Of a stretch of DNA of 64,000 bases, positions 7,215 to 60,042 are shown piece after piece. Location: the IMG/VR virus record IMGVR_UViG_3300032322_002561, positions 124,001 through 188,000 of that record; one strand, given 5' to 3'. The notes under the pieces are model-generated. The model was not told the DNA's origin, searched no databases, and was given only the letters and a program-made list of their open reading frames with translations. The first letter of the stretch is position 1, and every line of letters starts with the position of its first letter. Position numbers and translations under genes: made by a program.

Positions 7215-7784
7215 TCATAGACCTGCCTTGGCCAGTGCAGCGCCTTTGTTGAAACTGGGACTATAAGGACTGTTGCCATCAACACCACCACGTGCTTTTG
7301 ACCATGCATAGCCTGCACGATGACCCGAACAGTCTTTGGTGCATTCGCTACCCAAGAACTGTAGTTCGTCCAACTGTTGTTCAGTTACTGGACCACCTTC
7401 AACCCAGGCATCACAGGTACGCTTGGCAGCACATTTGAATTTCAAGAATTTACAGTAGCCCAAATCGCCTGCATCAATGGTGTCGTGCGGATCACTTCCA
7501 GGTTCAGTGCCAATGCCACGGGCAATACAATCTAACATATCTTCTGATATGTCAAAGGCCGCACAGTTGCCACAACGGTTTTGTTTTACTGATTCAATGT
7601 CGTCGGTGTTCCACTTGTCAGCCAATTCAACCCAGTATTCTTCATTGGGCTCGTTGGGGTTCAAGGGCCCATAGTGATATTCGTCTATGGCTTTTTGACG
7701 ATTACGTAAATTAAGATCGATGCTCTGTGTGGCCGGAGGACAACCTTTTTCCACTGCTTCGATCAAGTTAATTAAATCACGCAC
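7215..7784 (-). CDS. putative head-cargo protein with two Cys-rich modules
   Basis: Leader MRDLINLIE; CGNC..C..C..C module; LDE then LQFLGSECTKDCSGH module. Confidence 0.6.
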   Translation of the reverse strand: MRDLINLIEAVEKGCPPATQSIDLNLRNRQKAIDEYHYGPLNPNEPNEEYWVELADKWNTDDIESVKQNRCGNCAAFDISEDMLDCIARGIGTEPGSDPHDTIDAGDLGYCKFLKFKCAAKRTCDAWVEGGPVTEQQLDELQFLGSECTKDCSGHRAGYAWSKARGGVDGNSPYSPSFNKGAALAKAGL

Positions 7785-23315: not shown

Positions 23316-23362
23316 GGATGTCAGTTAGTTTGTGTTTAGTATATAGCAGGCCAAAGGTTTTG

Positions 23363-42509: not shown

Positions 42510-42525
42510 TTATGTTCTCTCAGTG

Positions 42526-43422: not shown

Positions 43423-43434
43423 CTTGAGTCCTGA

Positions 43435-46400
43435 TTATTCAACAATTTGCGCTTTGGGAAACACGAGATATTTATCATTAGCATCGCTGGTATCGTACAT
43501 ATCAACTGGCTCAACCCACTGCACACTGTCCTTGTCAAACGTGGTTTCTTGACTGGTGGTTGTAGTGGCTGAAATCAAGGGCAACCAACTGACTCGGGTC
43601 AATTCAGGTCCTGGGGCCACTGGTCTGTACAGATTGGTGCCTGCTGCATAGGTTTCGCCCTGACTGGATACCACGTAGTCGTTGGCCACAGTTTCTTGAC
43701 TCAGAGTCAAGGTGAACACACCGTCTAGGCCAATGCTTACAGTCCAGATTGCCATGCGATCATTTTCGTAATTCACAGTCATGGTGCCTGTGGCATTTGA
43801 CAAGGCCACGGGTGCACCGCCGGGCAACAAGCTGACCTGGAACCGTCCCAAGACCATGCGCATGATACCATTGGCATTGCTAAGTTGCAGTGGTAACCCA
43901 CCGGAAGTTTCACTGACTTGAAATTGTGTGGCGCTGAACACTTCCACAATATAATAGGGCTTGGACAAGCCGCTGGGGAGAATATTTTCAATGTTGCCAA
44001 ATGTGCCGCCTGCTGTAAACTGCATGTCGCCTGTGGCATCAATCACAGTGTAAATTGAACCCAAATATGTGGCACTTATGGTAATCTTTTTAAGGGCAGT
44101 GTTTACCCCAGCCACATAGTAGGTAACACCAGAATTTATGTTGCCAAAGTTTACACCGTCAAACACAATGGGCTGACCTATTTCTATACCAGTCACAGAA
44201 TCGCATACCAATTGGTTGCCAAGAGCTTCGGTGCGAGTGATTCGAGACTGTAGACGTCCGGCTGTAAACCATACTTCGTCACCTAGGGTCAATCCCGAGG
44301 TACTGGTGCAGGTCAAACGATCTGTGGCTGATGCTGATGCTGTGCAATTTACTGTGGCTATGTTGGTGACATAGTACACTTGAGTAAGTCCCAAACCTGT
44401 TTCAGCTGTGATACCACCAAACGTGGTTCCTGTAAAGTATATCTTGTTTCCTACCTGCATGTCTATAGTGGTGTCACATGTGATAAAATCTGTAGAGGCC
44501 GAGGTTGATGTACAGGCACTGGTAAAGCCAGGAAATACTGGCCTAGCATAGTCAAATGTGCCCGGAAACGCAATATCATTACCAAAATCAAATCCAATTT
44601 CATCGAATGGTTGAAGGAACTGACTCCACGCACCTTCAGCATCTACGGTACCGTAATTTTCTTGGCGCACAAAAATTATCTTGCTGCCGTTTCTTATCAC
44701 AACCTTGGTGCCTGGTGGTGGACTTTGGCCGCCTACTGCTACCCAAGTCACTCCATCTAGTCCGCCCAGTTCGTTTATGAATTCAACTGTGCGACCATTT
44801 ACCTCGCTAAATGCCAGTTCAGTACAGGCATTGACTATGCCAAGGTCGGTGTATCCTGTGGCATTGATACGATCAAACGTGGTTTGATTGGCCTCAGGTG
44901 TCCAATTCTGTGTTTCTGGATCCCAATTTTGACTGAGTGCCGCATCAACTTCGTAACGATCAACCTTGAAATCGATTTGATTGAGATTGAGACCGTACTG
45001 ACTGAGATAGTAGGCAATTTGACTGCTGCGTCCTGGATTGGTATAACAGATTACCCAGGCTGGTGTGAATCCCAACACACGACCATCAGTTTGTTTGCTG
45101 GTCATCCATAAAGGAAGTTCTGTGGAGATTTGACCCACAACATCAATGACTTGATCACGCATGTTGACCAGGCTGTTGGGATAGACTTCGGTTACTACGG
45201 TGCCATCGTCCAAGGTTATTGAATAGGGCAAAGTCACAATCTTGCTCACACTGGCACCTTGTGCATTAACTAGATTGTCAATGATTTGACTGTAAACGAC
45301 TTCATAAATCACCTCGCCGGTCTCAGGATCAAGAGCTTGTGCAGTTTCGATACTGCCCAAGATCAAGTTTTTCCAGTAGTGATTCTCGTACAGACTAGAC
45401 ACATAGGTTTCCAGGGTTTCTGGCGCTAGACCAAATGCGTGTTGGTACTTGACCTGTGTACTGAGTCCAAAATTTGCATCAGTGGGTCTATATATAAACT
45501 CTGGCGGGAATATTTCGGTGTTGGTCAACAAGGCATTTAACTGCGCACGATCATTCTGTGGCGGCATGGCCAACACAAAAAGATTTTGATAGGGTTTGTT
45601 GTACCTTCTTACCAGCTTGATTGTGAATTCTTTGAAAACACTGACAATTTCTTTTTGTCCGGTCAACCGCATGTTGGCTTGCAATTGCGCACCAGATCCG
45701 CCGTAGCCTTGAGCCACAAAAGCTATGGCTGGACTAATGTAGCCGGCACCGGGATTGGCAATATCAACTGAAACTATGCTGGTTCCCAGTATGGTCACAG
45801 TGCCGGCTTCGGCAGTTTCAGTTTGCGCACCCTTGGGTTCGCTGAACTGTATGACCGGCGTCAAGTTTCCGCTTTGATAGTTCAAACCGCCATTGAGCAC
45901 GGTCACACTGGCCACTTCGTAAATCAACTGCAAGGGATCTGTGGCAAAAGCGTTGACTGTGAACAAAAATGTAAGGTCAAACGTGGTGTCATTAACTCCC
46001 AACAGATCACTCTGTGAAACGTCAATTGTGGTGGTTCCTAGATCCAAACTAAAGGTATTAAAGCTGGCACGTCCAGCGATCTCGCCCGAGGTCAACAAGC
46101 GCAGACCCTGCGGCAATTGATTGAAATCGCCACTGCCCAATCTGTAAAACAGTTGCCTGCCACCGCGATTTACTGCTTCGACCTTGAAGATACTGGTTTG
46201 ACCGTTTTCTAATTCACCCAAAAATGCATCAGTGATCCAAGTTACTTCTTGGTCGGTGGCACCGGTCACAGTCAAGGTAAACGGATACAGCGTGCTTTGC
46301 GGAAGATCCTTGGGAACAGCCAACATTTCTCCTGTGGCTGTGGTCAAGGCCAATATAGAGCCACCCAGGGTGGCTGTTATGGAAAAATGTGTGTCATCCG

Positions 46401-47811
46401 GTATAGATAACACATAATAGATCTGTCCCGCTACAATACCACCAAAGGTTTCACCTTCGAATACTACTTCGGTTCCCACATAGAAGTCAGCACGTGTGGA
46501 TGTGTCGCACGTGATCAAGTTTGTGACACTGCTGGTTTCACTGCACACCAGAGTACGAGCACGCACCTGTATGTTGAAACTGTAGTCAATTTCGGTGGTA
46601 CCTTGATCAGGTATGTAGCCGTAGTACCAACCTGTGTATCGATCCAGTTGTAGGCCCGGTGGCAAACCATTTCCAAGGTTGACTGTGATGGCGTATTCAA
46701 CCTGGCTGGTGTCATAGTCTTGACCCACAAAACGATAAGCATAGTAGTTGTCACTGCGCACCCTTCCCAGAGTGCTGGGTTCAAAGTTCAACAAGAATGG
46801 TGCACGCTCAGTGGTTTCGTCTGCGGTAACCTCGCTGTTGTCGGCTGTGATGGTAGTATTGTCGCCGGTAAGATCATCGCGGTTGTACACAAATATGGTA
46901 TAGGTGCGCAGGTTGCTGCTTTTTCCGTCAGTGACTTCAAGCGTAAACTGATAATTCTTGCTTATGGCCGATACCACAAAGTCGTAGGGAAAATTTTCAC
47001 TAGGCGTTAAATCATAACCCACAGGTTCGTTGACATTTCTGGCAGGTTGAATATAGCCACTGATCAGGCCATCGGTGCTGACCGTGGTTCCTGGGGGCAA
47101 GGCACCAGCCACCAAGCGCACAATGTTGGTTTCACCAGGATCCACACCTTGTACTTCCACCTGCACATTGGCATAGTCACCATCATAGTATATGGCCAAT
47201 TGTCCAGCTGGTGTCACAAATTCAGGAATATCATTGCCGGTTATGGTCAAGGTAAATGTGCGATCAGCAATTCTATCAATGGCACCGCTGGGTGTCAAGG
47301 TGTATGCTCTAATCACAAACTTGCTAACGATGTCTGTGGCCACTGGTGTGGGAACGCCTTGAATCAAGGTTTGTGCTTGTGGTACACCTGTAATATTGCC
47401 ACTAGCGTTGATTTGCATGCCATTAGGCAAGGTACCAGCTATGAGTTGATACAAAATTGGCTGATAAAAATTTGTTACAAAATATCCCGTGGCCGTGGTC
47501 AAGGTCACACTGGTGGTGCTGTCGGCCGTGGCAGCAACTGTGAATGTTGTTGCACTGTCTACTGTGAGCACATAGTAAGGCACGTTGGCCTGTAGGCCAC
47601 CAAACGGACTACCACTGAATATCACACGATATCCTGGTCTAGCTCCAGCAGTAGTGTTGCAAGTAATTAAATTGGTACCTGCTGTGGTCTCACTCACAAT
47701 TGAAGCCGGAGCCGCGGGCGGAACTTCGGCCAAGAGTGGATTTTGGTAGAATACCTCTTCGGGTATAACCCCTAGGCTACCTGCGGGTGTAATCCAAATT
47801 GGTTGTGCCAT
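43435..47811 (-). CDS. large baseplate wedge/Ig-repeat structural protein
   Basis: W.TPAG.L and LP.GL.L..G.I.G Ig-like repeats; GG....YYV repeats; C-terminal DKYLVFP. Confidence 0.75.
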   Translation of the reverse strand: MAQPIWITPAGSLGVIPEEVFYQNPLLAEVPPAAPASIVSETTAGTNLITCNTTAGARPGYRVIFSGSPFGGLQANVPYYVLTVDSATTFTVAATADSTTSVTLTTATGYFVTNFYQPILYQLIAGTLPNGMQINASGNITGVPQAQTLIQGVPTPVATDIVSKFVIRAYTLTPSGAIDRIADRTFTLTITGNDIPEFVTPAGQLAIYYDGDYANVQVEVQGVDPGETNIVRLVAGALPPGTTVSTDGLISGYIQPARNVNEPVGYDLTPSENFPYDFVVSAISKNYQFTLEVTDGKSSNLRTYTIFVYNRDDLTGDNTTITADNSEVTADETTERAPFLLNFEPSTLGRVRSDNYYAYRFVGQDYDTSQVEYAITVNLGNGLPPGLQLDRYTGWYYGYIPDQGTTEIDYSFNIQVRARTLVCSETSSVTNLITCDTSTRADFYVGTEVVFEGETFGGIVAGQIYYVLSIPDDTHFSITATLGGSILALTTATGEMLAVPKDLPQSTLYPFTLTVTGATDQEVTWITDAFLGELENGQTSIFKVEAVNRGGRQLFYRLGSGDFNQLPQGLRLLTSGEIAGRASFNTFSLDLGTTTIDVSQSDLLGVNDTTFDLTFLFTVNAFATDPLQLIYEVASVTVLNGGLNYQSGNLTPVIQFSEPKGAQTETAEAGTVTILGTSIVSVDIANPGAGYISPAIAFVAQGYGGSGAQLQANMRLTGQKEIVSVFKEFTIKLVRRYNKPYQNLFVLAMPPQNDRAQLNALLTNTEIFPPEFIYRPTDANFGLSTQVKYQHAFGLAPETLETYVSSLYENHYWKNLILGSIETAQALDPETGEVIYEVVYSQIIDNLVNAQGASVSKIVTLPYSITLDDGTVVTEVYPNSLVNMRDQVIDVVGQISTELPLWMTSKQTDGRVLGFTPAWVICYTNPGRSSQIAYYLSQYGLNLNQIDFKVDRYEVDAALSQNWDPETQNWTPEANQTTFDRINATGYTDLGIVNACTELAFSEVNGRTVEFINELGGLDGVTWVAVGGQSPPPGTKVVIRNGSKIIFVRQENYGTVDAEGAWSQFLQPFDEIGFDFGNDIAFPGTFDYARPVFPGFTSACTSTSASTDFITCDTTIDMQVGNKIYFTGTTFGGITAETGLGLTQVYYVTNIATVNCTASASATDRLTCTSTSGLTLGDEVWFTAGRLQSRITRTEALGNQLVCDSVTGIEIGQPIVFDGVNFGNINSGVTYYVAGVNTALKKITISATYLGSIYTVIDATGDMQFTAGGTFGNIENILPSGLSKPYYIVEVFSATQFQVSETSGGLPLQLSNANGIMRMVLGRFQVSLLPGGAPVALSNATGTMTVNYENDRMAIWTVSIGLDGVFTLTLSQETVANDYVVSSQGETYAAGTNLYRPVAPGPELTRVSWLPLISATTTTSQETTFDKDSVQWVEPVDMYDTSDANDKYLVFPKAQIVE

Positions 47812-47820
47812 AGCAAGTGT

Positions 47821-50634
47821 TTATATTGTGAACCAACCACCGTTCCACATACGTAAGCGGTTGGTTGAATTGTTAAAATACATTGAGCCCACAGATCCGG
47901 TGGCAGGATCTGAAGTTCTTGACGGTATAACCATGTATTGTCCGTTGTTGAAGAAAGGAATACCACTCACAGAAAGTCCGGTCAAGGTTCCCAGGCTGGT
48001 TATAGCGGGTTGGCTGGCACCGGTCACAGTGAACGCATTGGTAGCATTTGTGGCGCTACTGGCAAAAGAAGCAGACCCCACGGTGCCTGTCACTTGTGCA
48101 CCAGGAATATTGGTGAGTCCAGCACCAGAGCCATTAAACTGGCTGCCACTGATTTGTCCTGTAGCGTTTATAGCGCCGCCGGTGGTGATACTGCCCGCGC
48201 TGACTGCGGCGCCAGTCACTGTGCCTGTAGCACTTAGGGTGGTACCAATTATGGTACCACTCAGACTCATTGACGATCCGGTGTATCCTGAAGCCAAGAC
48301 ATTGCCACCTTGAATGTTGCCTGTAGCACTTATTATGCCTGCTGTGCGCAAATTACCACCTTGAATGTTGCCTGTAGCACTGAGTGTGCTGGTCACACCC
48401 ACGGCCACTGCGGTTACGTTGCTGATCAAACCACCGTCGCCTAGCAAGAACGAAGAAGCCGCTACGTTGCCATTACTGGACACTGTGCCAAATGAATTAA
48501 TGTTACCGCCAATCACGTTGGCCGAGCTCTGTATTGCGCCCACTGCACTTATGATACCACTGGTGGTGATTGCGCCCGTGCTCACTATGTTTCCACCAAT
48601 CACGTTGCCCGTGGCACTGACAGTGAGTCCTTGAACCACCACTGCGGCCAAGACATTGCCACCATTGACATTGCCTGTAGCAGTGATCAATCCTGTTGTG
48701 CGTATGTTGCCGCCCTGAACGTTGCCGGTGGCAGTAAAGGTGGCTGTTTGCACAACACCAGCTGTGATCAAGTTGGCACCGGTGATATTTCCGCCAGCAC
48801 TGACTGTGCCGCTGGTGGCAATATTACCACCGGCCACGTTGCCCACGGCACTGACTGCGCCTTGCGCTTCAAGATTACCTACAACCAAGTTACCATAGCT
48901 GTTGATGGAAACAATTTCGTTTGTGATAGTGGCCGAAGTCACAGCCAACAGTTTACCTGAAGATGCTTGAAATCCTATAAAGCTACTGCGTTCCTGAGTG
49001 TCAAAATACCAAAGTTGTTCGCCACGGTCCTTGCCATCATTACTGATCAAAGGTGTATTGTTGGCACCGCGGCCAATGCCAATTATGGGATCTTCAATGG
49101 CCAAGGTGGATACATTGGTGTATTCGGCTGTGCCGTTGACAGTGAGATTACCGTTGACCACTGCATCGCCTGTTACAGACATGCTGCCTGGTGTGCTGAT
49201 GTTGCCGCTGGTCAGAGTGCCAATCACTGTGACAGCATTACTGATTTTGTTGAATGTGAATCCAGCCGTGGCATTTGCATTACCACCATCGTTGAATAGG
49301 ACCTGAGTGTTACTACCGCTGACATTTAAGTTACCTGAAATGTTACCAATAACGTTACCAAAGAAAGTTGTGGCTGTGACATTGCCTACAGCAGTGATGT
49401 TGGCCGATGCCAACAAATTGACCCCACGCACATTGGCCGTGGATACCACGTCATTTGTGGAGTTGATGTTGCCACCTGTGACGTTGCCTGTGGCGCTGAT
49501 TGCGGCAATAGTAGTAAAACCAAACACAGCATTGGCACTACCAGCCAGAATTATGTTATTGCCGGAGATGTTTCCAGCAGCACTGACCACACCGCCTGTT
49601 ATGACATTACCACTGGTGATGTTGCCTGACGCACTAATTCTTGCGGCAGTGACCAAAGTTGTTGCGTTGATGTTGTTGGCAGCCACGTTGCCATCCACAA
49701 GACCGGCCGTGATGTTACCGCCAGTGATGTCACCAGTGGTGCTGATACTGGCACCTGTGACCACACCTAGACTTACTAAATTGGCACCAATTACATTGCC
49801 ACCAGCACTGACTGTAATGCCCACAGATATATTGTTGCTGGTGATATTTCCTGTGCCGCCCAGACTGTTGGCTACCACTAAACTGTCAAGTGTGCCCACG
49901 GTCTGCAACGAACTGTTGACCACGTTGGCACTTATTGTGGTACCAGTCAACAGCGCCGCGGCTGTTGTGGCTTGAATACCGGTCAAAAGACTGCCGTTGC
50001 CCACAAAAAAGTTGCCGCTGATGTTGCCTAATGTGCTAATGTTACCAGTGGCTATCAAAGCACCGGTTAGAGTGGCATCTGCACCAAAAATATCGCCTGT
50101 AGCACTCATAACACCGCCGGTGTTTAGATTCTGGGAAATTAGGTTTCCTGAAGCAGAAATGGTTCCAGCAGTGAGCAAGTTACCGCCAGTGACATTGCCG
50201 CCTACAACCAGCTGCGTGAGTGTGCCCACAGATGTCAGGGTGGAATTCACCACGTTTGCACTCAGCGTGGTTCCTGTGAGTTGTGCCGCATTGGCCTGAC
50301 TTACCACCCCAGTCAACAAACTACCATTGCCTATGTAAAATCCACCTGCAGTGATGTTGCCCGTGGCTGAAATTGCAGTGTTAGCTAGAAAAGTGCCTTG
50401 GGCAGTAACGCCTGTACCAGACACAACCAACACGTTGGCTATGTTGGCCGCACTCATGCTTATGGTGCTGTCTTGTACAATATTGATGTTTGATGTACCA
50501 TTGGCAATACCCGAAATACCACCAATGTTGTAGAGTTCGCTAAAATTATCGTTTGTGATGGTAAACGCGGTTCTTAACGGATCACCAGTGCCATCGTTGG
50601 CAGTGTTTCCAATATCTATAAACTGTTGTGGCAT
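47821..50634 (-). CDS. tail fibre-like protein with T4 gp9/gp10-type N-terminus
   Basis: IDIGNTANDGTGDPLRTAF..N.NFSELY; many SATGN[IV]xGGN repeats. Confidence 0.8.
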   Translation of the reverse strand: MPQQFIDIGNTANDGTGDPLRTAFTITNDNFSELYNIGGISGIANGTSNINIVQDSTISMSAANIANVLVVSGTGVTAQGTFLANTAISATGNITAGGFYIGNGSLLTGVVSQANAAQLTGTTLSANVVNSTLTSVGTLTQLVVGGNVTGGNLLTAGTISASGNLISQNLNTGGVMSATGDIFGADATLTGALIATGNISTLGNISGNFFVGNGSLLTGIQATTAAALLTGTTISANVVNSSLQTVGTLDSLVVANSLGGTGNITSNNISVGITVSAGGNVIGANLVSLGVVTGASISTTGDITGGNITAGLVDGNVAANNINATTLVTAARISASGNITSGNVITGGVVSAAGNISGNNIILAGSANAVFGFTTIAAISATGNVTGGNINSTNDVVSTANVRGVNLLASANITAVGNVTATTFFGNVIGNISGNLNVSGSNTQVLFNDGGNANATAGFTFNKISNAVTVIGTLTSGNISTPGSMSVTGDAVVNGNLTVNGTAEYTNVSTLAIEDPIIGIGRGANNTPLISNDGKDRGEQLWYFDTQERSSFIGFQASSGKLLAVTSATITNEIVSINSYGNLVVGNLEAQGAVSAVGNVAGGNIATSGTVSAGGNITGANLITAGVVQTATFTATGNVQGGNIRTTGLITATGNVNGGNVLAAVVVQGLTVSATGNVIGGNIVSTGAITTSGIISAVGAIQSSANVIGGNINSFGTVSSNGNVAASSFLLGDGGLISNVTAVAVGVTSTLSATGNIQGGNLRTAGIISATGNIQGGNVLASGYTGSSMSLSGTIIGTTLSATGTVTGAAVSAGSITTGGAINATGQISGSQFNGSGAGLTNIPGAQVTGTVGSASFASSATNATNAFTVTGASQPAITSLGTLTGLSVSGIPFFNNGQYMVIPSRTSDPATGSVGSMYFNNSTNRLRMWNGGWFTI

Positions 50635-50654
50635 AAAATCCTGTCCTTGTATGC

Positions 50655-50685
50655 TATTTACCAAAACTTAGTAGACCGCTAAATA
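50655..50685. promoter_or_regulatory. back-to-back late promoters of divergent tail genes
   Basis: TATTTA 50655-50660 (minus) and TAAATA 50680-50685 (plus), each followed by SD and ATG. Confidence 0.7.
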
Positions 50686-50704
50686 CACAAGTTCGGAGCA
50701 ATCA

Positions 50705-52735
50705 ATGTCATATATCATTAATAACAGTCGGGGTCAGGTTGTAGCTGTCGTTGCAGACGGCACTATCAATACTTCTGCCACCAGTTTGGCACTTGTGGGA
50801 CGTGCTGTCAGCGGTTATGGCACCAGTGAAAATGAAAATTACTTGTTTTTGTTGGAGAATTTTGCCAATTCCACCGAGCCCAACAACCCAATTCTAGGAC
50901 AACTATGGTACAATTCCAGTACCGATATTCTAAGCGTGTATGCCAGTGATAACAACTGGGCGGCTTTGGCCAGTGAACAGTACGTGGAAGATTCCAAAAT
51001 TTCGCCAATATTTACAGGCATACCCGAAGCACCCACAGCGGCCCCTGGCACTGCTACAACACAGATTGCAACCACGGCTTTTGTGACCTCAAGTCCGCAA
51101 TTTTTGGGAGTGCCACGAGCACCCACTGCCGTGGCCGGTACTGCTAACACACAAATAGCCACCACAGCCTTTGTCACAAACAGCCCACAACTGGCAGGCA
51201 CACCCACAGCACCCACAGCGGTTCCCGGAACCAATACCGCACAGATAGCCACCACAGCGTTTGTGACATCGGGTCCAGATTTTGCTGGCTCGCCCACAGC
51301 ACCCACACTGCCCACGGTAACCAACAGCACGCAGTTGGCCACTACAGCATTTGTGCAGAACAACAAAGTGAGTCCGGCCTTGTCGGGCACACCCACAGCA
51401 CCCACCGCCTCAGCAGGTACAAATACCACACAGATAGCCACCACGGCCTTTGTGCAAGGTGAAAAAGTCAGTCCAGCCTTTTCTGGCACACCCACAGCAC
51501 CCACAGCGGCTCCTGGAACCAATACCACACAGATAGCCACCACAGCTTTTGTGCAAGATGTGGCAGGAAACTTGGGCACCATGAGCACTCAGAATGCCAG
51601 TTCGGTCAACATCACTGGAGGCACCATTTCTGGCATCACACCTTTGCCTGTGTCGTCGGGCGGTACCGGTGCAAGTAACCCGGCTGGTGCACGAAGCAAC
51701 CTGGATCTTGGTACCATATCACAACAAAATGCCAACGCGGTGTCCATTTCAGGCGGGGAAATTACAGGTATTGTGGATCTATCTGTGGCCGATGGTGGAA
51801 CTGGTGCCAGCACAGCCGCTGGCGCACGTACCAATCTTGGGGTTGGAACGTTAGGCACACAAAATTTCAACAATGTAAACATCACTGGCGGAACAATTAC
51901 AGGTATTTCGCCCTTGCCGTTATCTGCAGGCGGCACAGGCGCACCCAATGCCGCACAGGCCAGAACCAATCTTGGACTGGGCGACTTGGCCACCCAATCT
52001 GCCAATAATGTATCAATTTCTGGTGGAGTCATAGAAGGAGTAAATTTACAAAATCTTGCTGGTCCTTTAGACATCATCTGCGGCGGTACAGGTGCAATCA
52101 ACGTGGTGCAGGCTCGCCTTAATTTAGGTCTTGATTCAATGTCCTTGCAGGCCAGCAACGCCGTCAACATCACCGGTGGTAACATCAGCGGTATCAATCC
52201 CTTGCCCATTTTGTCAGGTGGCACTGGAGCTTCAACAGTGGTGCAAGCACGTACTAATCTAGGTCTTGGCAGCATGGCCTTGCAAAACAGTAGCAACGTC
52301 AGCATTGGTGGCGGATTTATCAACACCTTGAGTGCGCCTTTGAACATTGCAGATGGTGGTACTGGAGCCACCACAGCTGAGCAGGCTAGAAACAATCTTG
52401 GACTAGGTACAGGCGCCACCGCCAATATTGGTACCATGGCTGGTCAAAATCAAAATGCAGTAACAATAACCGGCGGAACCATTGCTGGCATCACAGATCT
52501 TGCTGTGGCCGATGGCGGCACAGGTGCTTCTAGTGCTTCACAAGCAAGAATCAATTTGGGAGTACCGTCAACTGGTATTACAATATCGGCTGGCGCAGGT
52601 TTGTCGGGCGGTGGAGACCTAAGTGCCAACCGCACCTTAAGCATTGCATCAAACAGCAACGGATTTGGTGTTAGATACATTTCACCAGCATCGCCCACGG
52701 GTGGTAACAACGGCGATATCTGGTATCAGATTTAA
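50705..52735 (+). CDS. tail fibre protein
   Basis: N-terminal ENFA...P..GQLWY; about 7 PTAPTA..GTNTTQIATTAFV repeats; about 7 GGTGA...ARxNLGLG repeats; GDIWY end. Confidence 0.85.
   Translation: MSYIINNSRGQVVAVVADGTINTSATSLALVGRAVSGYGTSENENYLFLLENFANSTEPNNPILGQLWYNSSTDILSVYASDNNWAALASEQYVEDSKISPIFTGIPEAPTAAPGTATTQIATTAFVTSSPQFLGVPRAPTAVAGTANTQIATTAFVTNSPQLAGTPTAPTAVPGTNTAQIATTAFVTSGPDFAGSPTAPTLPTVTNSTQLATTAFVQNNKVSPALSGTPTAPTASAGTNTTQIATTAFVQGEKVSPAFSGTPTAPTAAPGTNTTQIATTAFVQDVAGNLGTMSTQNASSVNITGGTISGITPLPVSSGGTGASNPAGARSNLDLGTISQQNANAVSISGGEITGIVDLSVADGGTGASTAAGARTNLGVGTLGTQNFNNVNITGGTITGISPLPLSAGGTGAPNAAQARTNLGLGDLATQSANNVSISGGVIEGVNLQNLAGPLDIICGGTGAINVVQARLNLGLDSMSLQASNAVNITGGNISGINPLPILSGGTGASTVVQARTNLGLGSMALQNSSNVSIGGGFINTLSAPLNIADGGTGATTAEQARNNLGLGTGATANIGTMAGQNQNAVTITGGTIAGITDLAVADGGTGASSASQARINLGVPSTGITISAGAGLSGGGDLSANRTLSIASNSNGFGVRYISPASPTGGNNGDIWYQI
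51010..51560 (+). repeat. coding tandem repeats (about 90-100 bp unit) in tail fibre
   Basis: Recurrent gcacccacagc and acagatagccaccacagc. Confidence 0.8.
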
Positions 52736-52744
52736 AGACACTAG

Positions 52745-54091
52745 ATGGCACAGACAATTATCAGAGCTCTAGGATATGTAGGAGCTAGACAAGTTTTTAC
52801 TTGGCCTAGCAGTGCCAGTTTCAACAATTCAATCACAGCCTATCTGTGGGGTGGAGGTGGGGGTGGTGGCGGTTATGATGCTGGCAATTCGGGTGGTTCA
52901 GGCAGCGGTGGTGGTTACAGCCAAGTTACATTTAGTGCCAGCCCTGGCGATGTAATAGAAGTCAGCGTGGGTGGCCCAGGCACGGGTGGTGCCAGCAGTA
53001 GAAGCGGAGCTCCTGGCGGTAGTCCTGGCTTGAGCCTGGTCTTAGCAGGCACTGTGTTTACCACTCTAGACATAGCTGGAGTATTTAGAGTCACCAACGG
53101 AGCATATTGCACGTTCTTGAACAATTTTGGAGTCTGGAACGAGCCCGGTGGCGGCAGTGCCAGTTTTGGTCGCGACATTACTGTAAACTTCCCCAGTTCA
53201 GGTTTTTACACATTTGAGTTTTCAGTAGACAATGCAGGTCAAGTTTATCTCGACGGCGCTACAATTTTCAATCTCCAGGGCGAGTACAATTATGGTAACT
53301 CTGTTACTACAAGAGTGTTTGTTGCTGCCGGTAATCGCTTGTTGCAACTGCGTGGACAAAATTTTCATGGACCGGGCAGTTTTGGCCTGACCATTGCGGG
53401 CGGATTGGCCTTCAGTGGCGGTCGTGGAGGCAATGCGGGTGGTTCGGGCAGTTCTGGCGGAGGTGGCGGAGGTGGCGGTGCCACAGTGTTGAGGAAAAAT
53501 GGCACAGTGTTGGCCGTGGCCGGCGGTGGAGGTGGTGGAGGTGGTGCAGGTATCACATCGGGCACTGAGCCTGGAAACGCACCTGGACCATCAGGACAAA
53601 CCACACCCGGTATTTCAAACGGCAGTGATGGTGGCGACCGCGGTGGTGATGGCGGAGGTGGCGGAGGTGGCGGAGGTGGCAATGCCGGCGGTAACGGCGG
53701 ACCACAGGCTCCCTATGATACCTGGGGCTATGCGGGTTTTTATGGTGGTAATTTAGGAAACCGCAGCGCCAATCCACAAGGAACCACTGCTGGTTTCACA
53801 ACCAGTCCATATTATCCTGGCGGCGTTGGTAGAGGTGGCGGTCCCACAGCATCTGGGACTCCTGGCTATGCAGTGTTAGAATTTGAAATAACCGGAAGTT
53901 TTGTTAGGAATGGTGGAATATGGAATCCAATACAACAAACCTGGGTCAAACAAGATGACATATGGCAACCCGTGCAAGGAGTCTATGTCAAGTCAGGTGG
54001 GGAATGGCAACCTGTGGACGGCACCTTGGCTCCAAATTTCTCAGTGACAGGTGGTTCTTTTGGATACAGTTCTAGACCACAGGGTGGTTAG
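52745..54091 (+). CDS. glycine-rich tail fibre tip/receptor-binding protein with PA14-like insert
   Basis: WGGGGGGG poly-Gly tracts; [17 protein letters not shown]; C-terminal VKxGGxWxP repeats. Confidence 0.7.
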
Positions 54092-54411
54092 ACACTGAAA
54101 CTGCTTCCGCATCCGCATGTGGTTGTGGCTTGAGGATTTTTTATACTGAAAGCGGCACCGTATTGATCTTCTTTATAATCAATTTCAGCACCTTGCAAAT
54201 ACTGGCTGCTCATGCCGTCAACTAGGACATTTACTCCGCCTACGTCTAGATCAAAGTCGTCTTCGTTAGTGATTTCGTCTAGAGTAAAGCCATACTGAAA
54301 TCCTGAGCAACCACCACCTTGTACAAACACACGCAATTTCAAAGCAGGATTTTGTTCTTCGGCCAAGATGTCTCGCAGTTTGGCCACTGCTGATTCACTT
54401 ACTGTTATCAT
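54088..54411 (-). CDS. erpA: Fe-S cluster insertion protein ErpA/IscA
   Basis: [24 protein letters not shown]. Confidence 0.93.
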
Positions 54412-54962
54412 AATCTTTCGTTGCAAACATTCCAGTCAATAATTTTCCAGATGTTATCGAGATATTTTTCTTTGTCTGATTGATAATCCAGGGCCCAGGC
54501 ATGTTCCCACCAGTCCACTAACACACATATATCTGTTCTTACCGCATGGTTGGCTATGGTTTTGATGGTACCAGCAGTGCTCAAGTAAACCCACCCAGAA
54601 CCTTGGATCTTCATTGCTTCTGTTTTAAACGCTTCCTTGAAATCTTCCCAGGTTTTGAAGTTGCTTTCAATGAGTTCTAGCACAGCACCTCGAGGACGAT
54701 TGGCACCTCGCGGTGGTTGCAGTTGTGGAAAAAACTTGTTGTGTAAAAAACTGCCAGCACGATTGAAGTTTGCGTTGCCTTCGCCAGCATTGTATCTTTT
54801 TGCATAGCCCCGAGCCAGGTGTTCATAGTGATAGTCTATGGTTTCCTTGCTCATCACAGGATGCAAGTCACCAGGACCATAGGGCAAGGGCGTGGTTTCC
54901 AACTTGGCTGGACGTGTGCTGGCTTCTAATAGTTCTAGATCTTTGCGGATGTCGTGTTGCAT
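54408..54962 (-). CDS. Fe/Mn superoxide dismutase with N-terminal extension
   Basis: PLPY..L.P.MS.ET..YH, GSGW, DWWEHAW.LDY. Confidence 0.9.
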
Positions 54963-54970
54963 CTTGATAT

Positions 54971-55189
54971 TTACCTACGGCGTGTGACCCTGCCACGGGT
55001 GAGATCATATGGACTGAATTCTATTTCAACGCGATCTCCCAGGAGTATTTTGATGTTGTGCTGTCGCATCTTGCCAGAAATCACACCAGTTACCAAGGTA
55101 TCACTCACATCTAATTTGATTCTAAACATGGCATTGGGCAAAACATCTACCACAGTGCCTTCCATTTTGAAACCTTCTTCTTTGGCCAT
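54971..55189 (-). CDS. infA: translation initiation factor IF-1
   Basis: MAKEE...LPNAMFR...[22 protein letters not shown]. Confidence 0.97.
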
Positions 55190-55192
55190 GTG

Positions 55193-56173
55193 CTAGTTCA
55201 ACCAGTCGCCAATGATCTGCATGGTGGTAACATTTGTGGTATCAAACAACACGGATTTTTTGTTGTTGCTGTAGAAGCAGGTAAAGTTGTTGTCCACCCA
55301 GGGCATCAAGAGTTCTAGATTGACCGGATCTTTGACATCAAACAACCACAAATACAAGTCGGTTCGTTTGACCGGGCTGTCGCTTTTTCTATAGGCGCCC
55401 ACCAAGCGTCCGTAGTTCCACTCCCACTCACCAGTTTTTTCTGTCACAACATTGCAATGAAACAGTTCACTGGGCTGTATCAGTTTGGCCACGTCTTCGG
55501 TGCAGTGAACTTCAAGGCTGATTTTTCCGTAGTTTTTGATATTCTTTTGCCAGAAATTATGCACAGTTACACCAGCATTGATGTGTGGCAAGGCCTGATC
55601 TTGTTTGTCGTAAATGGTGTGTCTGATCACACTGCGACAAAATTTTGGCAGGCTTTGTTCACGTTCTTCCAGACTGATTTCATAGTCAAGATTAGTGAGA
55701 TGAAACATGGCGTCAAATTCTTGTGTGCTGGAAATACGTTGACACGAATGCAACAAAGGCATGCTGTGTCCCTTGGGTACCAACAACACCAGACTACCAA
55801 GAGCCAGACCACTGCAGGCAAGAGCCGCAAATCTGGTTGCACCTGCACCAAGCTCAAGTTCACCTGCCGAGTTCAAGGTAGCAAACAAAGGCAACAGAAA
55901 CTCTTCGTGTTGGCGTGTCTGACAGAGATGTTGAACAAAACCCAGATGTTTGTAGTCGGTATTCATGTAGGCCTGTTTTATGGCCTGGATTGTTTGATTG
56001 CGCCAGCGCAGATTCAAGTCATGATCAAGATGCCGACACACATAGAGATCACCCAGTGTCAGACAGTATTCAACCCAACCAAACTGTGCGCCATCAACTT
56101 CGGTGCTGAGAGTCTTGCCTTCTTGACTGTCAGAACGATAGCTGATTTTGGTTTTTATGCTAGTATTATTCAT
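55193..56173 (-). CDS. hypothetical protein
   Basis: 326-aa ORF in operon order. Confidence 0.65.
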   Translation of the reverse strand: MNNTSIKTKISYRSDSQEGKTLSTEVDGAQFGWVEYCLTLGDLYVCRHLDHDLNLRWRNQTIQAIKQAYMNTDYKHLGFVQHLCQTRQHEEFLLPLFATLNSAGELELGAGATRFAALACSGLALGSLVLLVPKGHSMPLLHSCQRISSTQEFDAMFHLTNLDYEISLEEREQSLPKFCRSVIRHTIYDKQDQALPHINAGVTVHNFWQKNIKNYGKISLEVHCTEDVAKLIQPSELFHCNVVTEKTGEWEWNYGRLVGAYRKSDSPVKRTDLYLWLFDVKDPVNLELLMPWVDNNFTCFYSNNKKSVLFDTTNVTTMQIIGDWLN

Positions 56174-57481: not shown

Positions 57482-58042
57482 TTAGATTTTTTCCGCATAA
57501 AAAATGTGTCTCCCAAATTTACCTACCACGGGTTTGCCCCATTGTGGTTTCACATAGTCTGCATGAAAATAAAGTGCGTTTTTCATGCTGGGCAGTCTGA
57601 AACCTTCTAGTAGGACCTTTTTCGCTACTTCTTCTGCTTCTTTCCAGTGTGCTGGATATATGGGTCGGATCTTGCTGGATCCATCACAGAACCAGGAAAA
57701 CTGACATACTACCTTGTCATACACAATGTTCTTTTGATAAACCACACCGCAGATGTCTCGGGCAAAACGTCCCGACTCCACACGGTTGATGGTGACCTGT
57801 GCCACAGCGACCTTGCCTTCAAAGGGCTCGGTTGCGGCTTCCCAGTAGATGTTGCGTGTCAAGCAATCCAACTGCTTGGCTCGATCAGCGGCACTGACAA
57901 AGCCTTGACGTGCCGCTTCGTTGGTGGCACGCAGAGTTTCTAATTTTGTGTCGGTGACAAACAGCACTGCCACGACCACGGCCATGAAACTGATGGCCTT
58001 TACTACTATACTGCCTAGATTGGACTTTGAAGTTGCCTTCAT
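57482..58042 (-). CDS. SleB/Hydrolase_2 cell wall hydrolase with N-terminal membrane anchor
   Basis: CLTRNIYWEA, VAQVTINRV, CQFSW, ALYFHADYV.P.W, HIFY. Confidence 0.9.
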   Translation of the reverse strand: MKATSKSNLGSIVVKAISFMAVVVAVLFVTDTKLETLRATNEAARQGFVSAADRAKQLDCLTRNIYWEAATEPFEGKVAVAQVTINRVESGRFARDICGVVYQKNIVYDKVVCQFSWFCDGSSKIRPIYPAHWKEAEEVAKKVLLEGFRLPSMKNALYFHADYVKPQWGKPVVGKFGRHIFYAEKI

Positions 58043-58321
58043 AGTTTTCTCCCGTCAGCTTAGTGAGCTGTTCACCGGAGTGCCCAGGATGGGCGCATTG
58101 ACAAAGATTTGGGCAAAAGAAAAGACCTCGGGCCTCCTTTGGCATACTCTCCGAGCGCGGCTTTGTTTCTCACCGGGCCTGTACCATTTGTCAATGAAGA
58201 GGATTTCCGAAGTCCTCTTTGATCAGCTTTGCGGCACTGACCGATCCGTTGTGGAGTAGAAGTTGGGTGTAATCCTCCGCTGATCGATTCTACGACAGCC
58301 TGAACTGGTGTTCTACTCCAT
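58043..58321 (-). ncRNA. about 280-nt structured 5' leader RNA of the cell wall hydrolase
   Basis: 10-bp stems 58311-58320/58252-58261 and 58187-58196/58096-58105; hairpin 58197-58219; SD-pairing stem 58049-58080. Confidence 0.6.
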
Positions 58322-58422
58322 AAAATACTTAGTAACTGATCAATATCAGAAACAAATAAAGTCATTTTTTTAACACTTTTTACCATAATATACACATATT
58401 ATAGCACGACTAAGTTTTAAAG

Positions 58423-58749
58423 TCAATCTCGTTCAATTAGATGTCTTTTTTGCTCGATCTTACTCCAATGATCAGCATCAGGCAAAGCATCAACTCGTTT
58501 GGTCATAGACGGCCATAATTGAGCTAACTCTGCATTGAGCGCAATAAATTCTTGTTGATCTCCAGGAACATCATCTTCGGCATAAATCGCATTTACTGGA
58601 CATTCTGGTACGCAAACAGCACAATCGATACACTCGTTGGGATCAATTACAAGAAAATTTGGCCCTGCTCGAAAACAATCTACTGGACACACATCTACAC
58701 AATCAGTGTAACGGCATTTGACACAGGCTTCGGTTACAACAAAAGTCAT
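58423..58749 (-). CDS. fdxA: 7Fe ferredoxin FdxA
   Basis: [31 protein letters not shown]. Confidence 0.93.
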
Positions 58750-58750
58750 A

Positions 58751-59512
58751 TTACTCCTCGAATTTACAAACTGGGATTGGCGTCATTTTGTGCATGTTTT
58801 GGGCACGCAGTTCTCGATAACGTTTTAATTTTTTCCTGTCTTGTGGCGCGGCTCCAAATCCCGCCGCATCCAACTGCATCATGGTTTCCAGTTCAGGATA
58901 GGTCATGCCCAACTGATCTTCATCGGTGCGTCCATCAGCCCAGAGTCCGTCTGTGGGTGCGGCATCAATGATTTCCGGCATGATGCCAAGCTCGCGACCC
59001 ATGGACCATACGTCGGTCTTCATGCAGTCGCCAATGGGGCTGATGTCCACACCACCATCGCCATACTTGGTAAAAAAGCCCACACCAAAATCCTCGACCC
59101 GGTTACCGGTGCCAACAACAATGCCACTATTGCACTGTGCAATTTGATACAAGGTCATCATGCGTAATCGACTACGGCTGTTGGCAAAGGCCAACTCGTT
59201 GTCAAACACTGTGCCCATGGCTCGTTCAAATTGTTTAAAAGTAGGTGTAAGATCCAAGGTGTAGTTTTCAGCATTGGGATATTGTGTGGTCAACCAGTAA
59301 GCATGCCCTACGCTGAGTTCATGAGTGTGTTTGCTCTGTTTTATGGGCATGCACACAGCCATGGTAGGGATACCGGTGCGAGCACACAAGGTGGATACCA
59401 CAGCTGAGTCAATGCCGCCCGATACTCCCACCACAAGAGTTTTGATCTTGTTTTTGGTGGCGTAGCTTTTGATCCACTTTGTAATATAATTAATTCTTTG
59501 TTTGGGCGTCAT
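58751..59512 (-). CDS. nadE: NH3-dependent NAD+ synthetase
   Basis: [39 protein letters not shown]. Confidence 0.95.
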
Positions 59513-60042
59513 TCTATTTCTGGAGCGGGCATGGCTTTGATACGATCCCAAGTGGCCTGTTTATCCTTAATATGCTGTTCTAGCTTGCGATATTGTTCAC
59601 CCAGCTCACGCAGGTCCTCCCACTCCTTTTCCAATTCTGGATTGGGTTGGAACAGGCTCAAGCGTTCTTCGATCCTTTTGACCGCTGCTACCAGACTCCA
59701 GCCATTGACTTCTACATCAGCGCCTTCACCGTTGAGTTGGATTCGGCCGCTGGTAGGACTTTGTGTGAACCAAGGTGTTGCGTTGGTTCCAGTGGAGTAA
59801 ATGGTGTTGGACAACGAAAGATTACCAAAGGTAACCGAAGGTGAAATACTGGCTCCAATAGCACCAGTCACAGTGTATGGACTGGTCAGGCTCATGTTGT
59901 CCAAAGCCGAGGTAATGGTTATGGTATCATTTGCAATGTCACTGGCAGTGGGAGTGCTCTCGTACAAGGCAAAGTTGTTGTTTAGGTCCCACTCCTTGAC
60001 AATTTCCTCCAAGCGAGTGGGTGCAGATATTTTGGGTTCCAT
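59509..60042 (-). CDS. hypothetical protein
   Basis: ORF overlapping both neighbours. Confidence 0.7.
   Translation of the reverse strand: MEPKISAPTRLEEIVKEWDLNNNFALYESTPTASDIANDTITITSALDNMSLTSPYTVTGAIGASISPSVTFGNLSLSNTIYSTGTNATPWFTQSPTSGRIQLNGEGADVEVNGWSLVAAVKRIEERLSLFQPNPELEKEWEDLRELGEQYRKLEQHIKDKQATWDRIKAMPAPEIE

What the first reader, a model, noticed from the sequence alone, without database searches (positions are those of the whole stretch)
54408..54973. Superoxide dismutase with a late promoter and a cargo-like cleavable leader
Seen: the SOD core (LPY...) is preceded by [14 protein letters not shown], resembling MRDLINLIE/A of the cargo genes, and the gene has its own TAAATA 5 nt upstream. 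The metal-ligand His/Asp residues appear retained, but flanking motifs deviate (HYEHLA, DWWEHAW). Inference: the SOD may be packaged in the capsid to protect virion DNA or be injected, rather than acting only as a cytoplasmic auxiliary enzyme.
Basis: inference. Interest (0 to 1): 0.6.

Follow-up and report, generated by a model that had tools for sequence, protein, structure and literature searches.

The report
Phage superoxide dismutase with capsid-targeting leader
An uncultured giant phage encodes a small iron/manganese superoxide dismutase with a short detachable end-peptide and a late-gene promoter, which suggests the enzyme is loaded into the phage head rather than acting only in the infected cell.

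Summary
Window 54408-54962 (minus strand) encodes a 184-aa Fe/Mn-type SOD. All four metal ligands are invariant. A 13-aa N-terminal helix ends in L-L-E|A, and TAAATA lies 5 nt before the ATG.

The window is part of a 236-kb fragment (about 68% complete) of an uncultured jumbo phage related to Pseudomonas phage PA5oct. Complete relatives encode a T4-type prohead protease (Peptidase_S77, which in T4 cuts after L/I-x-E), a gp23-type capsid protein and a gp55-like late sigma factor.

- **Leader:** all 143 homologues with an N-terminal leader keep a hydrophobic-x-E site in it.
- **Transposed helix:** a sister subgroup has no N-leader. It carries the same helix motif at the C-terminus, and an L/I-x-E site precedes that helix in 5 of 6 members.
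- **Shared signal:** an unrelated protein in the window (7215-7784) has almost the same leader.
- **Virions:** the PA5oct homologue was detected by mass spectrometry of purified virions.
- **Promoter:** TAAATA is the most enriched upstream hexamer, goes with structural genes, and sits 4-5 nt before the SOD start in 70 of 80 related loci.

Most likely (about 0.6) this is a late-expressed SOD targeted to the prohead and trimmed by the prohead protease. Cleavage, packaging and enzyme activity are all inferred. It is a new cargo for a known mechanism.

The parts
54968..54973 (-). TAAATA late-promoter-like element, 5 nt before the SOD ATG. Its TAA doubles as the infA stop codon.
   Evidence: Sequence. 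It is the most enriched hexamer upstream of genes, 29 observed against 1.8 expected. It lies 4-5 nt before the SOD ATG in 70 of 80 related loci, whatever the upstream gene.
54924..54962 (-). Codons 1-13: the leader [13 protein letters not shown], an amphipathic helix that ends in the L-L-E site of the predicted prohead-protease cut before A14.
   Evidence: In the AlphaFold2 model the helix spans residues 5-16 and residues 1-20 have pLDDT 67-68, against more than 92 for the core.
54408..54923 (-). Predicted mature SOD (residues 14-184 plus the stop codon). Ligands are H45, H74, D150 and H154, with Y53 and H139 also conserved. The helical hairpin is about 18 aa shorter than in cellular SODs.
   Evidence: Pfam. 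PDB sequence alignment puts residue 22 opposite residue 3 of B. fragilis SodFM2 8avm. Foldseek gives TM about 0.8 to Fe/Mn SODs.
54971..55189 (-). infA (translation initiation factor IF-1), the upstream neighbour, 8 nt away.
   Evidence: Pfam eIF-1a at 7e-19. infA lies upstream of the SOD in 58 of 80 related loci.
54088..54411 (-). iscA/erpA-type Fe-S assembly gene. Its ATG overlaps the SOD stop as ATGA.
   Evidence: Pfam Fe-S_biosyn at 4.2e-19. The overlap was read. iscA lies downstream of the SOD in 54 of 80 related loci.
7215..7784 (-). Unrelated 189-aa Cys-rich protein, annotated 'HiPIP' in other phages, with the same leader type MRDLINLIE|A.
   Evidence: The leader is conserved in about 75 IMG/VR loci and is a true N-terminus. 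The scoring matrix gives 24.3. Its homologue in Actinomycetia phage DSL-LC01 lies directly before the capsid maturation protease gene.

Best explanation
This is a late-expressed, virion-destined Fe/Mn superoxide dismutase of a PA5oct-like jumbo phage.

**Proposed mechanism.**
1. A gp55-type late promoter element (TAAATA) lies 5 nt before the ATG. With T4 geometry the late transcript would begin at or next to the AUG.
2. The primary product carries a 13-aa N-terminal amphipathic helix with the pattern hydrophobic-R-x-x-hydrophobic-D/N/E-hydrophobic-hydrophobic-E.
3. This helix acts like the capsid targeting sequence of T4 internal proteins and docks the enzyme to the scaffold core of the prohead.
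4. The T4-type prohead protease (Peptidase_S77, specificity L/I-x-E) then cuts after Glu13. That releases mature SOD, starting ASTRPAKLE, inside the head.
5. The enzyme stays with the DNA and is probably ejected into the next host, where it removes superoxide at the onset of infection.

**Shown here:** the SOD fold and ligands, conservation of the leader, its transposition to the C-terminus, the same leader on a second protein, the protease, gp23-type capsid protein and gp55 homologues in relatives, the statistics of the promoter motif, and the mass-spectrometry flag on the PA5oct homologue.

**Inferred:** targeting, cleavage, packaging, ejection, enzymatic activity and a leaderless transcript.
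For: **1. Enzyme.**
- Pfam Sod_Fe_C scores 8.5e-22.
- The AlphaFold2 model has pLDDT 92.4, and Foldseek gives TM about 0.8 to Fe/Mn SODs.
- H45, H74, D150 and H154 are invariant.

**2. Leader.**
- 120 close homologues and 80 IMG/VR loci vary in leader length (9-17 aa) and sequence. All keep the hydrophobic-x-E|A ending and the following (S/T)T(R/K)[11 protein letters not shown].
- 22 homologues at 36-65% identity, including PA5oct, keep the same helix and site.
- Overall 143 of 143 have the site, against about 20% background.

**3. Transposition.**
- The six proteins of the Vibrio phage 2.275.O subgroup have no N-leader.
- They have a C-terminal tail with the same helix motif. The scoring matrix built from N-leaders places 4 of 6 tails at a null fraction of 0.0007-0.02.
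- [LI]xE lies 3-6 aa before the tail helix in 5 of 6.

**4. Shared signal.**
- The non-homologous protein at 7215-7784 has MRDLINLIE|A. The SOD of relative G002 has MRNEINLIE|A.
- PA5oct virion protein gp380 starts MRLNEINLIE|T.

**5. Machinery.**
- Peptidase_S77 (about 1e-24) and Gp23 (about 1e-100) are present in four complete relatives, in PA5oct and in Vibrio phage 2.275.O.
- The capsid protein has YLKE|N at the position of the T4 gp23 cleavage site. That placement is by eye and from memory of the T4 sequence; no alignment was run.
- T4 rules: the L/I-x-E cleavage motif and a 10-aa capsid targeting sequence (PMC9026906).

**6. Virions.** PA5oct EST35_0261 (38% identical, same leader) is flagged ESI-MS/MS, from purified particles.

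**7. Promoter.**
- TAAATA is 16-fold enriched upstream of genes.
- In G002 it precedes 65 of 450 genes, against 5 expected.
- It precedes 18 of 44 genes whose PA5oct homologue was found in virions, against 9 of 52 whose homologue was not (odds ratio 3.3, p=0.0096).
- gp55 homologues are present.
- The T4 late promoter spans -13 to -6 (PMC1524935). ATAAATA precedes structural genes in the jumbo phages CBB and GAP32 (PMC5259590).

**8. Distribution and precedent.**
- The nearest ESM Atlas clusters are 100% viral.
- Chlorovirus PBCV-1 expresses a Cu/Zn SOD late and packages it in the virion (PMC7019647).
Against: - There is no direct evidence of cleavage or packaging for this phage. The record lacks its own head module because it is a 68% fragment.
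- The PA5oct virion list also contains evident cytoplasmic enzymes without leaders, so contamination could explain the SOD there too.
- Generic leader patterns are only weakly enriched among PA5oct virion-detected proteins (odds ratio about 2, p 0.04-0.13). The enrichment disappears under a conservative choice of start codons.
- The SOD leader does not resemble the T4 sequence MKTYQEFIAE beyond its L/I-x-E end. Other proteins of the clade carry the truly T4-like MRxxEF(I/V)xE leader.
- The gene context is translation, Fe-S and chaperone genes (infA, iscA; ClpS, Hsp20 and ClpX in PA5oct), which fits a cytoplasmic auxiliary role.
- The closest complete relative, G002, has no second protein with the strict leader.
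- His30 and the dimer-interface Tyr of canonical SODs are not conserved, so activity is unproven.
Confidence: 0.6

Rival explanations
1. The SOD is a cytoplasmic auxiliary enzyme. It would protect phage replication and Fe-S enzymes in the infected cell. The terminal helix would be a docking, oligomerisation or degradation (ClpX/ClpS-type) tag that works at either end, and the hydrophobic-x-E would be a by-product of helix composition.
For: - The neighbours are infA and iscA here, ClpS, Hsp20, ClpX and S21 in PA5oct, and IF-3, S21 and ClpS-like genes in Vibrio phage 2.275.O.
- The PA5oct mass-spectrometry list includes other cytoplasmic enzymes.
- Enrichment of leader patterns among virion-detected proteins is weak.
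- The hairpin is shortened, and an extra helix might compensate for it.
Against: - A structural helix would not be expected to move from the N- to the C-terminus while keeping an L/I-x-E between itself and the core.
- The same leader sits on an unrelated protein whose homologue lies next to a capsid maturation protease gene.
- PA5oct virion protein gp380 has a near-identical N-terminus.
- The conserved TAAATA goes with structural genes.
- Residues 1-20 have lower pLDDT than the core.
Confidence: 0.25
2. The protein is packaged but is not an enzyme. It would be an SOD-fold protein recruited as a structural or DNA-associated head component. Vaccinia A45R, an inactive SOD-like virion protein, is a comparison recalled from memory. 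The Fe-SOD subunits PAP4 and PAP9 of the plastid RNA polymerase are another.
For: - His30 and the interface Tyr are not conserved, the hairpin has an 18-aa deletion, and Sod_Fe_N scores below its cut-off.
- PAP4 and PAP9 appear among the sequence and fold matches.
Against: All four metal ligands, Tyr34, GSGW and the outer-sphere H139 are invariant over homologues as low as about 37% identical. That pattern is typical of a maintained active site.
Confidence: 0.1
3. The resemblance is chance. The N-terminal extension has no specific function, and TAAATA is only the infA stop codon followed by AT-rich spacer.
For: - TAA is indeed the infA stop codon.
- Loose [ILVMF]xE motifs occur in about 20% of N-termini.
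Against: - 143 of 143 leaders have the site.
- The scoring matrix gives 24.3 against a null maximum of 7.8.
- TAAATA is kept at 4-5 nt in nearly all of the 22 loci with a different upstream gene.
- TAAATA is 16-fold enriched upstream of genes.
Confidence: 0.03

Closest known systems
T4 internal proteins IPI/IPII/IPIII and Alt, with their capsid targeting sequence (PMC9026906, PMC3012670)
   Same: - A short N-terminal propeptide, about 10 aa in T4.
- It ends in L/I-x-E and is removed by the gp21-family prohead protease.
- It is shared by otherwise unrelated cargo proteins.
- Alt is an enzyme and is processed at both ends.
- These proteins are made late.
   Different: - The SOD leader sequence is unlike MKTYQEFIAE, and its length varies from 9 to 17 aa.
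- The cargo is a metalloenzyme of the SOD family.
- A C-terminal version of the signal exists.
- Nothing has been shown experimentally.
Pseudomonas phage PA5oct EST35_0261 (QCG76142.1, 'hypothetical protein')
   Same: 38% identical over residues 1-177. It has a 13-aa leader ending I-A-E|A and the same ligands. ATAAATA lies upstream of it, after a terminator. It was detected by ESI-MS/MS of purified virions.
   Different: The GenBank record MK797984 annotates it only as a hypothetical protein, and the word 'superoxide' does not occur in the main text of the PA5oct paper. Nearly identical genes in phages MIJ3 and Callisto are annotated sodB. Its neighbours are ClpS, Hsp20 and ClpX rather than infA and iscA. 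The promoter motif is 24 nt upstream and is followed by a Shine-Dalgarno-like AGGGA.
Cellular Fe/Mn SODs, for example Bacteroides fragilis SodFM2 (8avm) and Porphyromonas gingivalis SOD (1qnn)
   Same: The two-domain fold (TM about 0.8), four metal ligands, Tyr34 and GSGW. Sequence identity is about 30%.
   Different: About 20 extra N-terminal residues. About 18 residues are deleted from the helical hairpin. His30 is absent. A His (H139) stands at the position aligned with the outer-sphere Gln of Mn-SODs; this placement is from memory and was not verified with the tools. The nearest clusters are all viral.
Chlorovirus PBCV-1 A245R Cu/Zn SOD (PMC7019647)
   Same: A virus-encoded SOD, expressed late and packaged in the virion. 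It is thought to lower superoxide early in the next infection.
   Different: It belongs to an unrelated SOD family (Cu/Zn), in a eukaryotic virus, with no known cleavable targeting peptide.
ATAAATA late promoters of the jumbo phages CBB and GAP32, and T4 TATAAATA (PMC5259590, PMC1524935)
   Same: The same core motif, a gp55-like sigma factor, and a position ahead of structural genes.
   Different: Here about a third of the sites lie only 4-7 nt before the ATG, which implies leaderless transcripts.

Membership tests
Fe/Mn superoxide dismutase (Pfam PF02777 + PF00081) | C-terminal alpha/beta domain | tested here: met
   Sod_Fe_C at 8.5e-22, profile positions 1-102 of 102.
Fe/Mn superoxide dismutase (Pfam PF02777 + PF00081) | N-terminal alpha-hairpin domain | tested here: inconclusive
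   Sod_Fe_N scores 25.3 bits, under the 27-bit cut-off, and only profile positions 5-48 of 82 match. About 18 aa are deleted. The predicted fold still superposes on SODs at TM about 0.8.
Fe/Mn superoxide dismutase (Pfam PF02777 + PF00081) | Four metal ligands (His, His, Asp, His) plus the gateway Tyr | tested here: met
   H45, H74, D150, H154 and Y53 are invariant in 38 sequences and align with the ligand motifs of 8avm.
Fe/Mn superoxide dismutase (Pfam PF02777 + PF00081) | Superoxide dismutation activity and metal content | not testable with these tools
   This needs recombinant protein or virion assays.
T4-type capsid-targeted, protease-processed head cargo | The phage encodes a gp21-family (Peptidase_S77) prohead protease and a gp23-type capsid protein | tested here: met
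   Both are absent from the 68% fragment G000. Both are present in four complete relatives that carry the same SOD, and the protease is also present in PA5oct and Vibrio phage 2.275.O.
T4-type capsid-targeted, protease-processed head cargo | A short terminal propeptide separated from the mature protein by L/I-x-E | tested here: met
   L-L-E|A at residues 11-14. The site is present in 143 of 143 N-leader homologues. In 5 of 6 C-tail homologues the site precedes the tail helix.
T4-type capsid-targeted, protease-processed head cargo | Sequence similarity to the T4 capsid targeting sequence MKTYQEFIAE | tested here: not met
   By eye, the SOD leader shares only the hydrophobic-x-E end. Other proteins of the clade (MRxxEF[IV]xE) do resemble it.
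T4-type capsid-targeted, protease-processed head cargo | The same signal on unrelated cargo proteins | tested here: met
   The protein at window 7215-7784 and PA5oct virion protein gp380.
T4-type capsid-targeted, protease-processed head cargo | The protein is present in purified virions | tested here: inconclusive
   Only the PA5oct homologue has data. It carries the ESI-MS/MS flag, but that list also includes cytoplasmic enzymes.
T4-type capsid-targeted, protease-processed head cargo | Removal of the propeptide, demonstrated | not testable with these tools
   No peptide-level data are held; the supplement is absent. The protease-leader complex prediction gave no verdict.
T4-type late gene (gp55-dependent promoter) | A TATAAATA-like element just upstream, and a gp55 homologue in the genome | tested here: met
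   TAAATA lies 5 nt before the ATG and is conserved in 70 of 80 loci. The gp55 homologue is at G000 7983-8891, E=4e-10. gp33 was not searched for.
T4-type late gene (gp55-dependent promoter) | Late timing of the transcript | not testable with these tools
   No RNA runs hold this sequence. The only support is the indirect association with structural genes.

The most novel reading that the evidence does not exclude
PA5oct-like jumbo phages would use a portable capsid-targeting helix that works at either end of a protein, together with a Glu-specific prohead-protease site. With it they would load active redox metalloenzymes into the head and deliver them with the DNA: an Fe/Mn SOD and a Cys-rich 'HiPIP-like' protein. 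This would be the first virion-borne SOD in a bacteriophage. These genes would be expressed from late promoters placed so that the mRNA is leaderless.
Probability: 0.4. Interest if true: 0.75.

Novelty: new variant of a known kind. Interest (0 to 1): 0.62.

Why it matters
**Biology.** If true, some abundant freshwater, marine and Pseudomonas jumbo phages carry an antioxidant enzyme inside the capsid. It would protect the DNA, or blunt the oxidative burst at the moment of infection. No such strategy came up for a bacteriophage in the searches made here, which were few. The known precedent is a eukaryotic giant virus (PBCV-1).

**A new signal.** The work defines a targeting peptide different from the T4 sequence. 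It works at either terminus and could be used to load foreign proteins into jumbo-phage heads.

**Testability.** The idea can be tested directly in the cultured phage PA5oct.

**Annotation.** It would also assign a function to a protein annotated only as 'hypothetical protein' in the PA5oct GenBank record. It would explain why a viral subfamily of about 180-aa SODs carries terminal extensions.

Tried and rejected
- **Head genes in G000.** PF03420 and tblastn with the PA5oct head module against G000 found nothing. The record is a 68% fragment, so complete relatives were used instead.
- **Leader patterns in PA5oct.** Generic N-terminal [ILVMF]xE or MK/MR patterns tested against virion mass-spectrometry status gave only weak enrichment that is not robust. 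The gapless scoring matrix from SOD leaders found only the SOD itself in PA5oct, because gp380 differs by a one-residue shift.
- **Strict leader pattern.** In G002 it matched no true N-terminus other than the SOD. In G000 it matched only the SOD and the gene at 7215-7784.
- **Complex prediction.** The G002 prohead protease with SOD residues 1-40 gave no verdict, and is evidence neither way.
- **Vibrio phage relatives.** None were found in viral contigs. They were obtained by the word search instead.
- **Other searches.** PHROGs gave no family for the SOD. Literature searches for an SOD in jumbo-phage virions found nothing. The supplement of the PA5oct paper is not held.
- **Rejected ideas.** A wrong start codon is excluded because the next Met is residue 37, inside the core, and the leader is conserved at the protein level. 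A Sec or Tat signal is excluded because there is no hydrophobic core and no twin arginine.

Full report
**What is there.**

The finding's range holds one ORF on the minus strand, 54408..54962, 184 aa.
- Pfam gives Sod_Fe_C at 8.5e-22. Sod_Fe_N is a partial match just under its cut-off.
- On the coding strand the sequence before the ATG reads GGTAAATA-TCAAG-ATG, so TAAATA lies 5 nt upstream as reported.
- The TAA of that motif is the stop codon of infA (IF-1, 54971-55189).
- The SOD stop overlaps the start of an iscA-type gene as ATGA (54088-54411).

**Which genome.**

The window is bases 124001-188000 of an IMG/VR virus record of 236,309 bp. The record is linear and about 68% complete.
- The best cultured relatives of the SOD are the Pseudomonas jumbo phages of the PA5oct group (38% identity over residues 1-177) and Vibrio phage 2.275.O (41% over residues 28-184).
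- The word search found 3561 homologues, and the top 120 are 80-93% identical. IMG/VR holds 321 related loci, some on contigs of 320-345 kb.
- One of these contigs, G002, is 344,244 bp with direct terminal repeats and is rated 100% complete. It shares 96 protein families with PA5oct.
- Its head module is collinear with PA5oct gp149-154: portal, 73-aa protein, acidic protein, protease, scaffold, capsid protein.
- Four complete relatives, PA5oct and Vibrio phage 2.275.O all encode Peptidase_S77, the T4 gp21 family, at about 1e-24. The four complete relatives also score about 1e-100 for Gp23, and PA5oct annotates a precursor of the major head subunit.
- The capsid protein has YLKE|N (FLVE|N in PA5oct) where T4 gp23 is cut at FLTE|A. 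This placement is by eye and from my memory of the T4 sequence.

**The enzyme.**

An alignment of 38 homologues as low as about 37% identical to the window protein keeps H45, Y53, H74, D150, W152, E153, H154, H139 and GSGW invariant.
- AlphaFold2 gives pLDDT 92.4. Foldseek finds Fe/Mn SODs at TM about 0.8.
- Against B. fragilis SodFM2 (8avm), residue 22 pairs with residue 3. About 18 residues of the helical hairpin are missing.
- The protein is therefore a shortened SOD with about 20 extra N-terminal residues.
- His30 and the interface Tyr of classical SODs are not conserved. Activity is plausible but unproven.
- The nearest ESM Atlas clusters are all viral.

**The leader.**

In the 120 close homologues and the 80 loci the leader varies in length (9-17 aa) and sequence. 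It always ends hydrophobic-hydrophobic-E|A, followed by (S/T)T(R/K)[11 protein letters not shown].
- Variants such as MRKEINLIE|A and MRNEINLIE|A (the G002 protein) are almost the same as MRDLINLIE|A, the start of the unrelated gene at 7215-7784.
- Twenty-two distant homologues, including PA5oct (MNDSIKKYISIAE|A), keep the helix and a hydrophobic-x-E.
- In all, 143 of 143 leaders have such a site, against 19-23% of control windows.
- In the model the leader is a separate helix (residues 5-16). Residues 1-20 have pLDDT 67-68, against more than 92 for the core.

**The strongest single result.**

The six proteins of the Vibrio phage 2.275.O subgroup lack the N-leader. After the end of the SOD fold they carry a tail such as ...MLDE|SVNIRHLINFISK.
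- The tail helix has the pattern hydrophobic-R-x-hydrophobic-hydrophobic-N/D-hydrophobic-hydrophobic.
- It is recognised by a scoring matrix built only from N-terminal leaders. Four of six tails reach a null fraction of 0.0007-0.02.
- Five of six have [LI]xE 3-6 residues before the helix.
- So the helix moves from one end of the protein to the other, and the Glu site stays between helix and core. This is what a detachable targeting peptide predicts, and is hard to reconcile with a structural element.

**The same signal elsewhere.**

- The protein at 7215-7784 is Cys-rich and annotated 'HiPIP' in other phages. It keeps its MR(D/N)x(I/L)N(L/I)xE|A start in about 75 loci, and that start is a true N-terminus.
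- The SOD-leader matrix scores it 24.3, against a null maximum of 7.8.
- Its homologue in Actinomycetia phage DSL-LC01 lies directly before the capsid maturation protease gene.
- Several of the 93 PA5oct proteins found in virions have such starts: gp380 MRLNEINLIE|T, gp381, gp150, gp175, gp238 and gp349.
- G002 also has five proteins starting MRxx(E/D)F(I/V)xE, close to the T4 sequence MKTYQEFIAE. That is five of ten proteome-wide matches at N-termini, against 0.4 expected.
- Window genes at 7896-17867 and 25153-28453 start in a similar way and carry GNAT, HAD-like and amidoligase domains.
- T4 precedent: a 10-aa targeting sequence, cleavage after L/I-x-E, unrelated cargo sharing the signal, and Alt processed at both ends (PMC9026906; PMC3012670).

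**Virion evidence.**

PA5oct EST35_0261 carries the GenBank note ESI-MS/MS. The paper states that this analysis was done on proteins of purified particles and yielded 93 products, including seven 'virion-unrelated enzymes'.
- ThyA, RNR, ClpP, FtsH and ligase are also flagged, and they have no comparable leader. Contamination therefore cannot be excluded.
- Generic leader patterns are only weakly enriched among the flagged proteins.

**The promoter.**

- TAAATA is the most enriched hexamer in the 40 nt before genes, 29 observed against 1.8 expected.
- In G002 it precedes 65 of 450 genes, against 5 expected. These include the portal, sheath, tube, baseplate and fibre genes.
- It is commoner before genes whose PA5oct homologue is virion-detected: 18 of 44 against 9 of 52, odds ratio 3.3, p=0.0096.
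- A T4 gp55 homologue lies at G000 7983-8891, beside gp46/47 homologues as in T4. G002 and PA5oct have one too.
- Before the SOD, TAAATA lies 4-5 nt from the ATG in 70 of 80 loci. That includes nearly all of the 22 loci whose upstream gene is not infA. It is therefore not just a stop codon.
- T4 late promoters span -13 to -6 (PMC1524935). A 5-nt spacer therefore puts the transcript start on the A of the ATG, which would make the mRNA leaderless. This is an inference.
- ATAAATA before structural genes, together with a gp55-like factor, has been described for the jumbo phages CBB and GAP32 (PMC5259590).
- The G002 capsid gene has TATAAT plus a Shine-Dalgarno sequence instead, so TAAATA is not the only late signal.

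**Verdict.**

- The most likely reading (about 0.6) is a late-made SOD that is targeted to the prohead by a terminal helix and trimmed by the S77 protease after Glu13.
- The main rival (about 0.25) is a cytoplasmic enzyme whose terminal helix serves another purpose.
- Cleavage, packaging, ejection and activity remain to be shown, and PA5oct offers a direct test.
- The mechanism is known from T4, and virion SODs are known from chloroviruses (PMC7019647). What is new is the cargo, the signal and its transposition.

Noticed in passing
Window 54963-54973, and many other gene starts in G000 and G002 (for example window 27866-28453 and 55193-56173): About a third of the genes that carry TAAATA have it only 4-7 nt before the ATG, with no Shine-Dalgarno sequence. 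The rest have it 17-30 nt upstream with AGGA or GGAG in between. With T4 late-promoter geometry the first class would give leaderless mRNAs. The phage also encodes IF-1 and S21.
   Followed up: partly
P0002 and P0148-P0152 (the Vibrio phage 2.275.O subgroup; L002 4968-5537): These SOD homologues have no N-terminal leader. They carry the same helix motif at the C-terminus, and L/I-x-E precedes it in 5 of 6.
   Followed up: yes
Window 7896-17867 and 25153-28453 (minus strand): A run of genes starts MKFQDL, MILTDLFE, MKIMEI, MNIHEL, MRAQEF, MRAEEF or MRASEL, which resembles the T4 targeting sequence. They carry GNAT, amidoligase and HAD/PNK-like domains. They are candidate packaged enzymes, like T4 Alt.
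   Followed up: partly
Window 7215-7784 (minus strand): A Cys-rich 189-aa protein, annotated 'high potential iron-sulfur protein' in other phages, has the SOD-type leader. Its homologue in Actinomycetia phage DSL-LC01 lies directly before the capsid maturation protease gene and has a 113-aa N-terminal region that ends AVE|A.
   Followed up: partly
G000 7983-8891 (outside the window); G002 73389-74342; PA5oct gp137: A homologue of the T4 late sigma factor gp55 lies next to gp46/47-type recombination nuclease genes, as in T4. [quoted passage not shown]
   Followed up: partly
Window 28865-30142 (minus strand): An isocitrate lyase gene (Pfam ICL 1.4e-102) in a phage genome, a glyoxylate-shunt auxiliary metabolic gene.
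   Followed up: no
Window 21039-24136, 38985-39386, 57482-59551: A set of host-like genes: a ClpB/ClpA-type AAA+ chaperone, DnaJ, a GroES-like protein, a SleB-type cell-wall hydrolase, an FdxA-type ferredoxin and NAD synthase. DnaK, ClpX, ClpS, Hsp20 and S21 lie further along the record.
   Followed up: no
Window 41013-54091: A block of very long, repeat-rich fibre-like proteins (298 to 1458 aa). It includes a Gly-rich 448-aa protein with a weak PA14 match. The block converges on the SOD operon.
   Followed up: no
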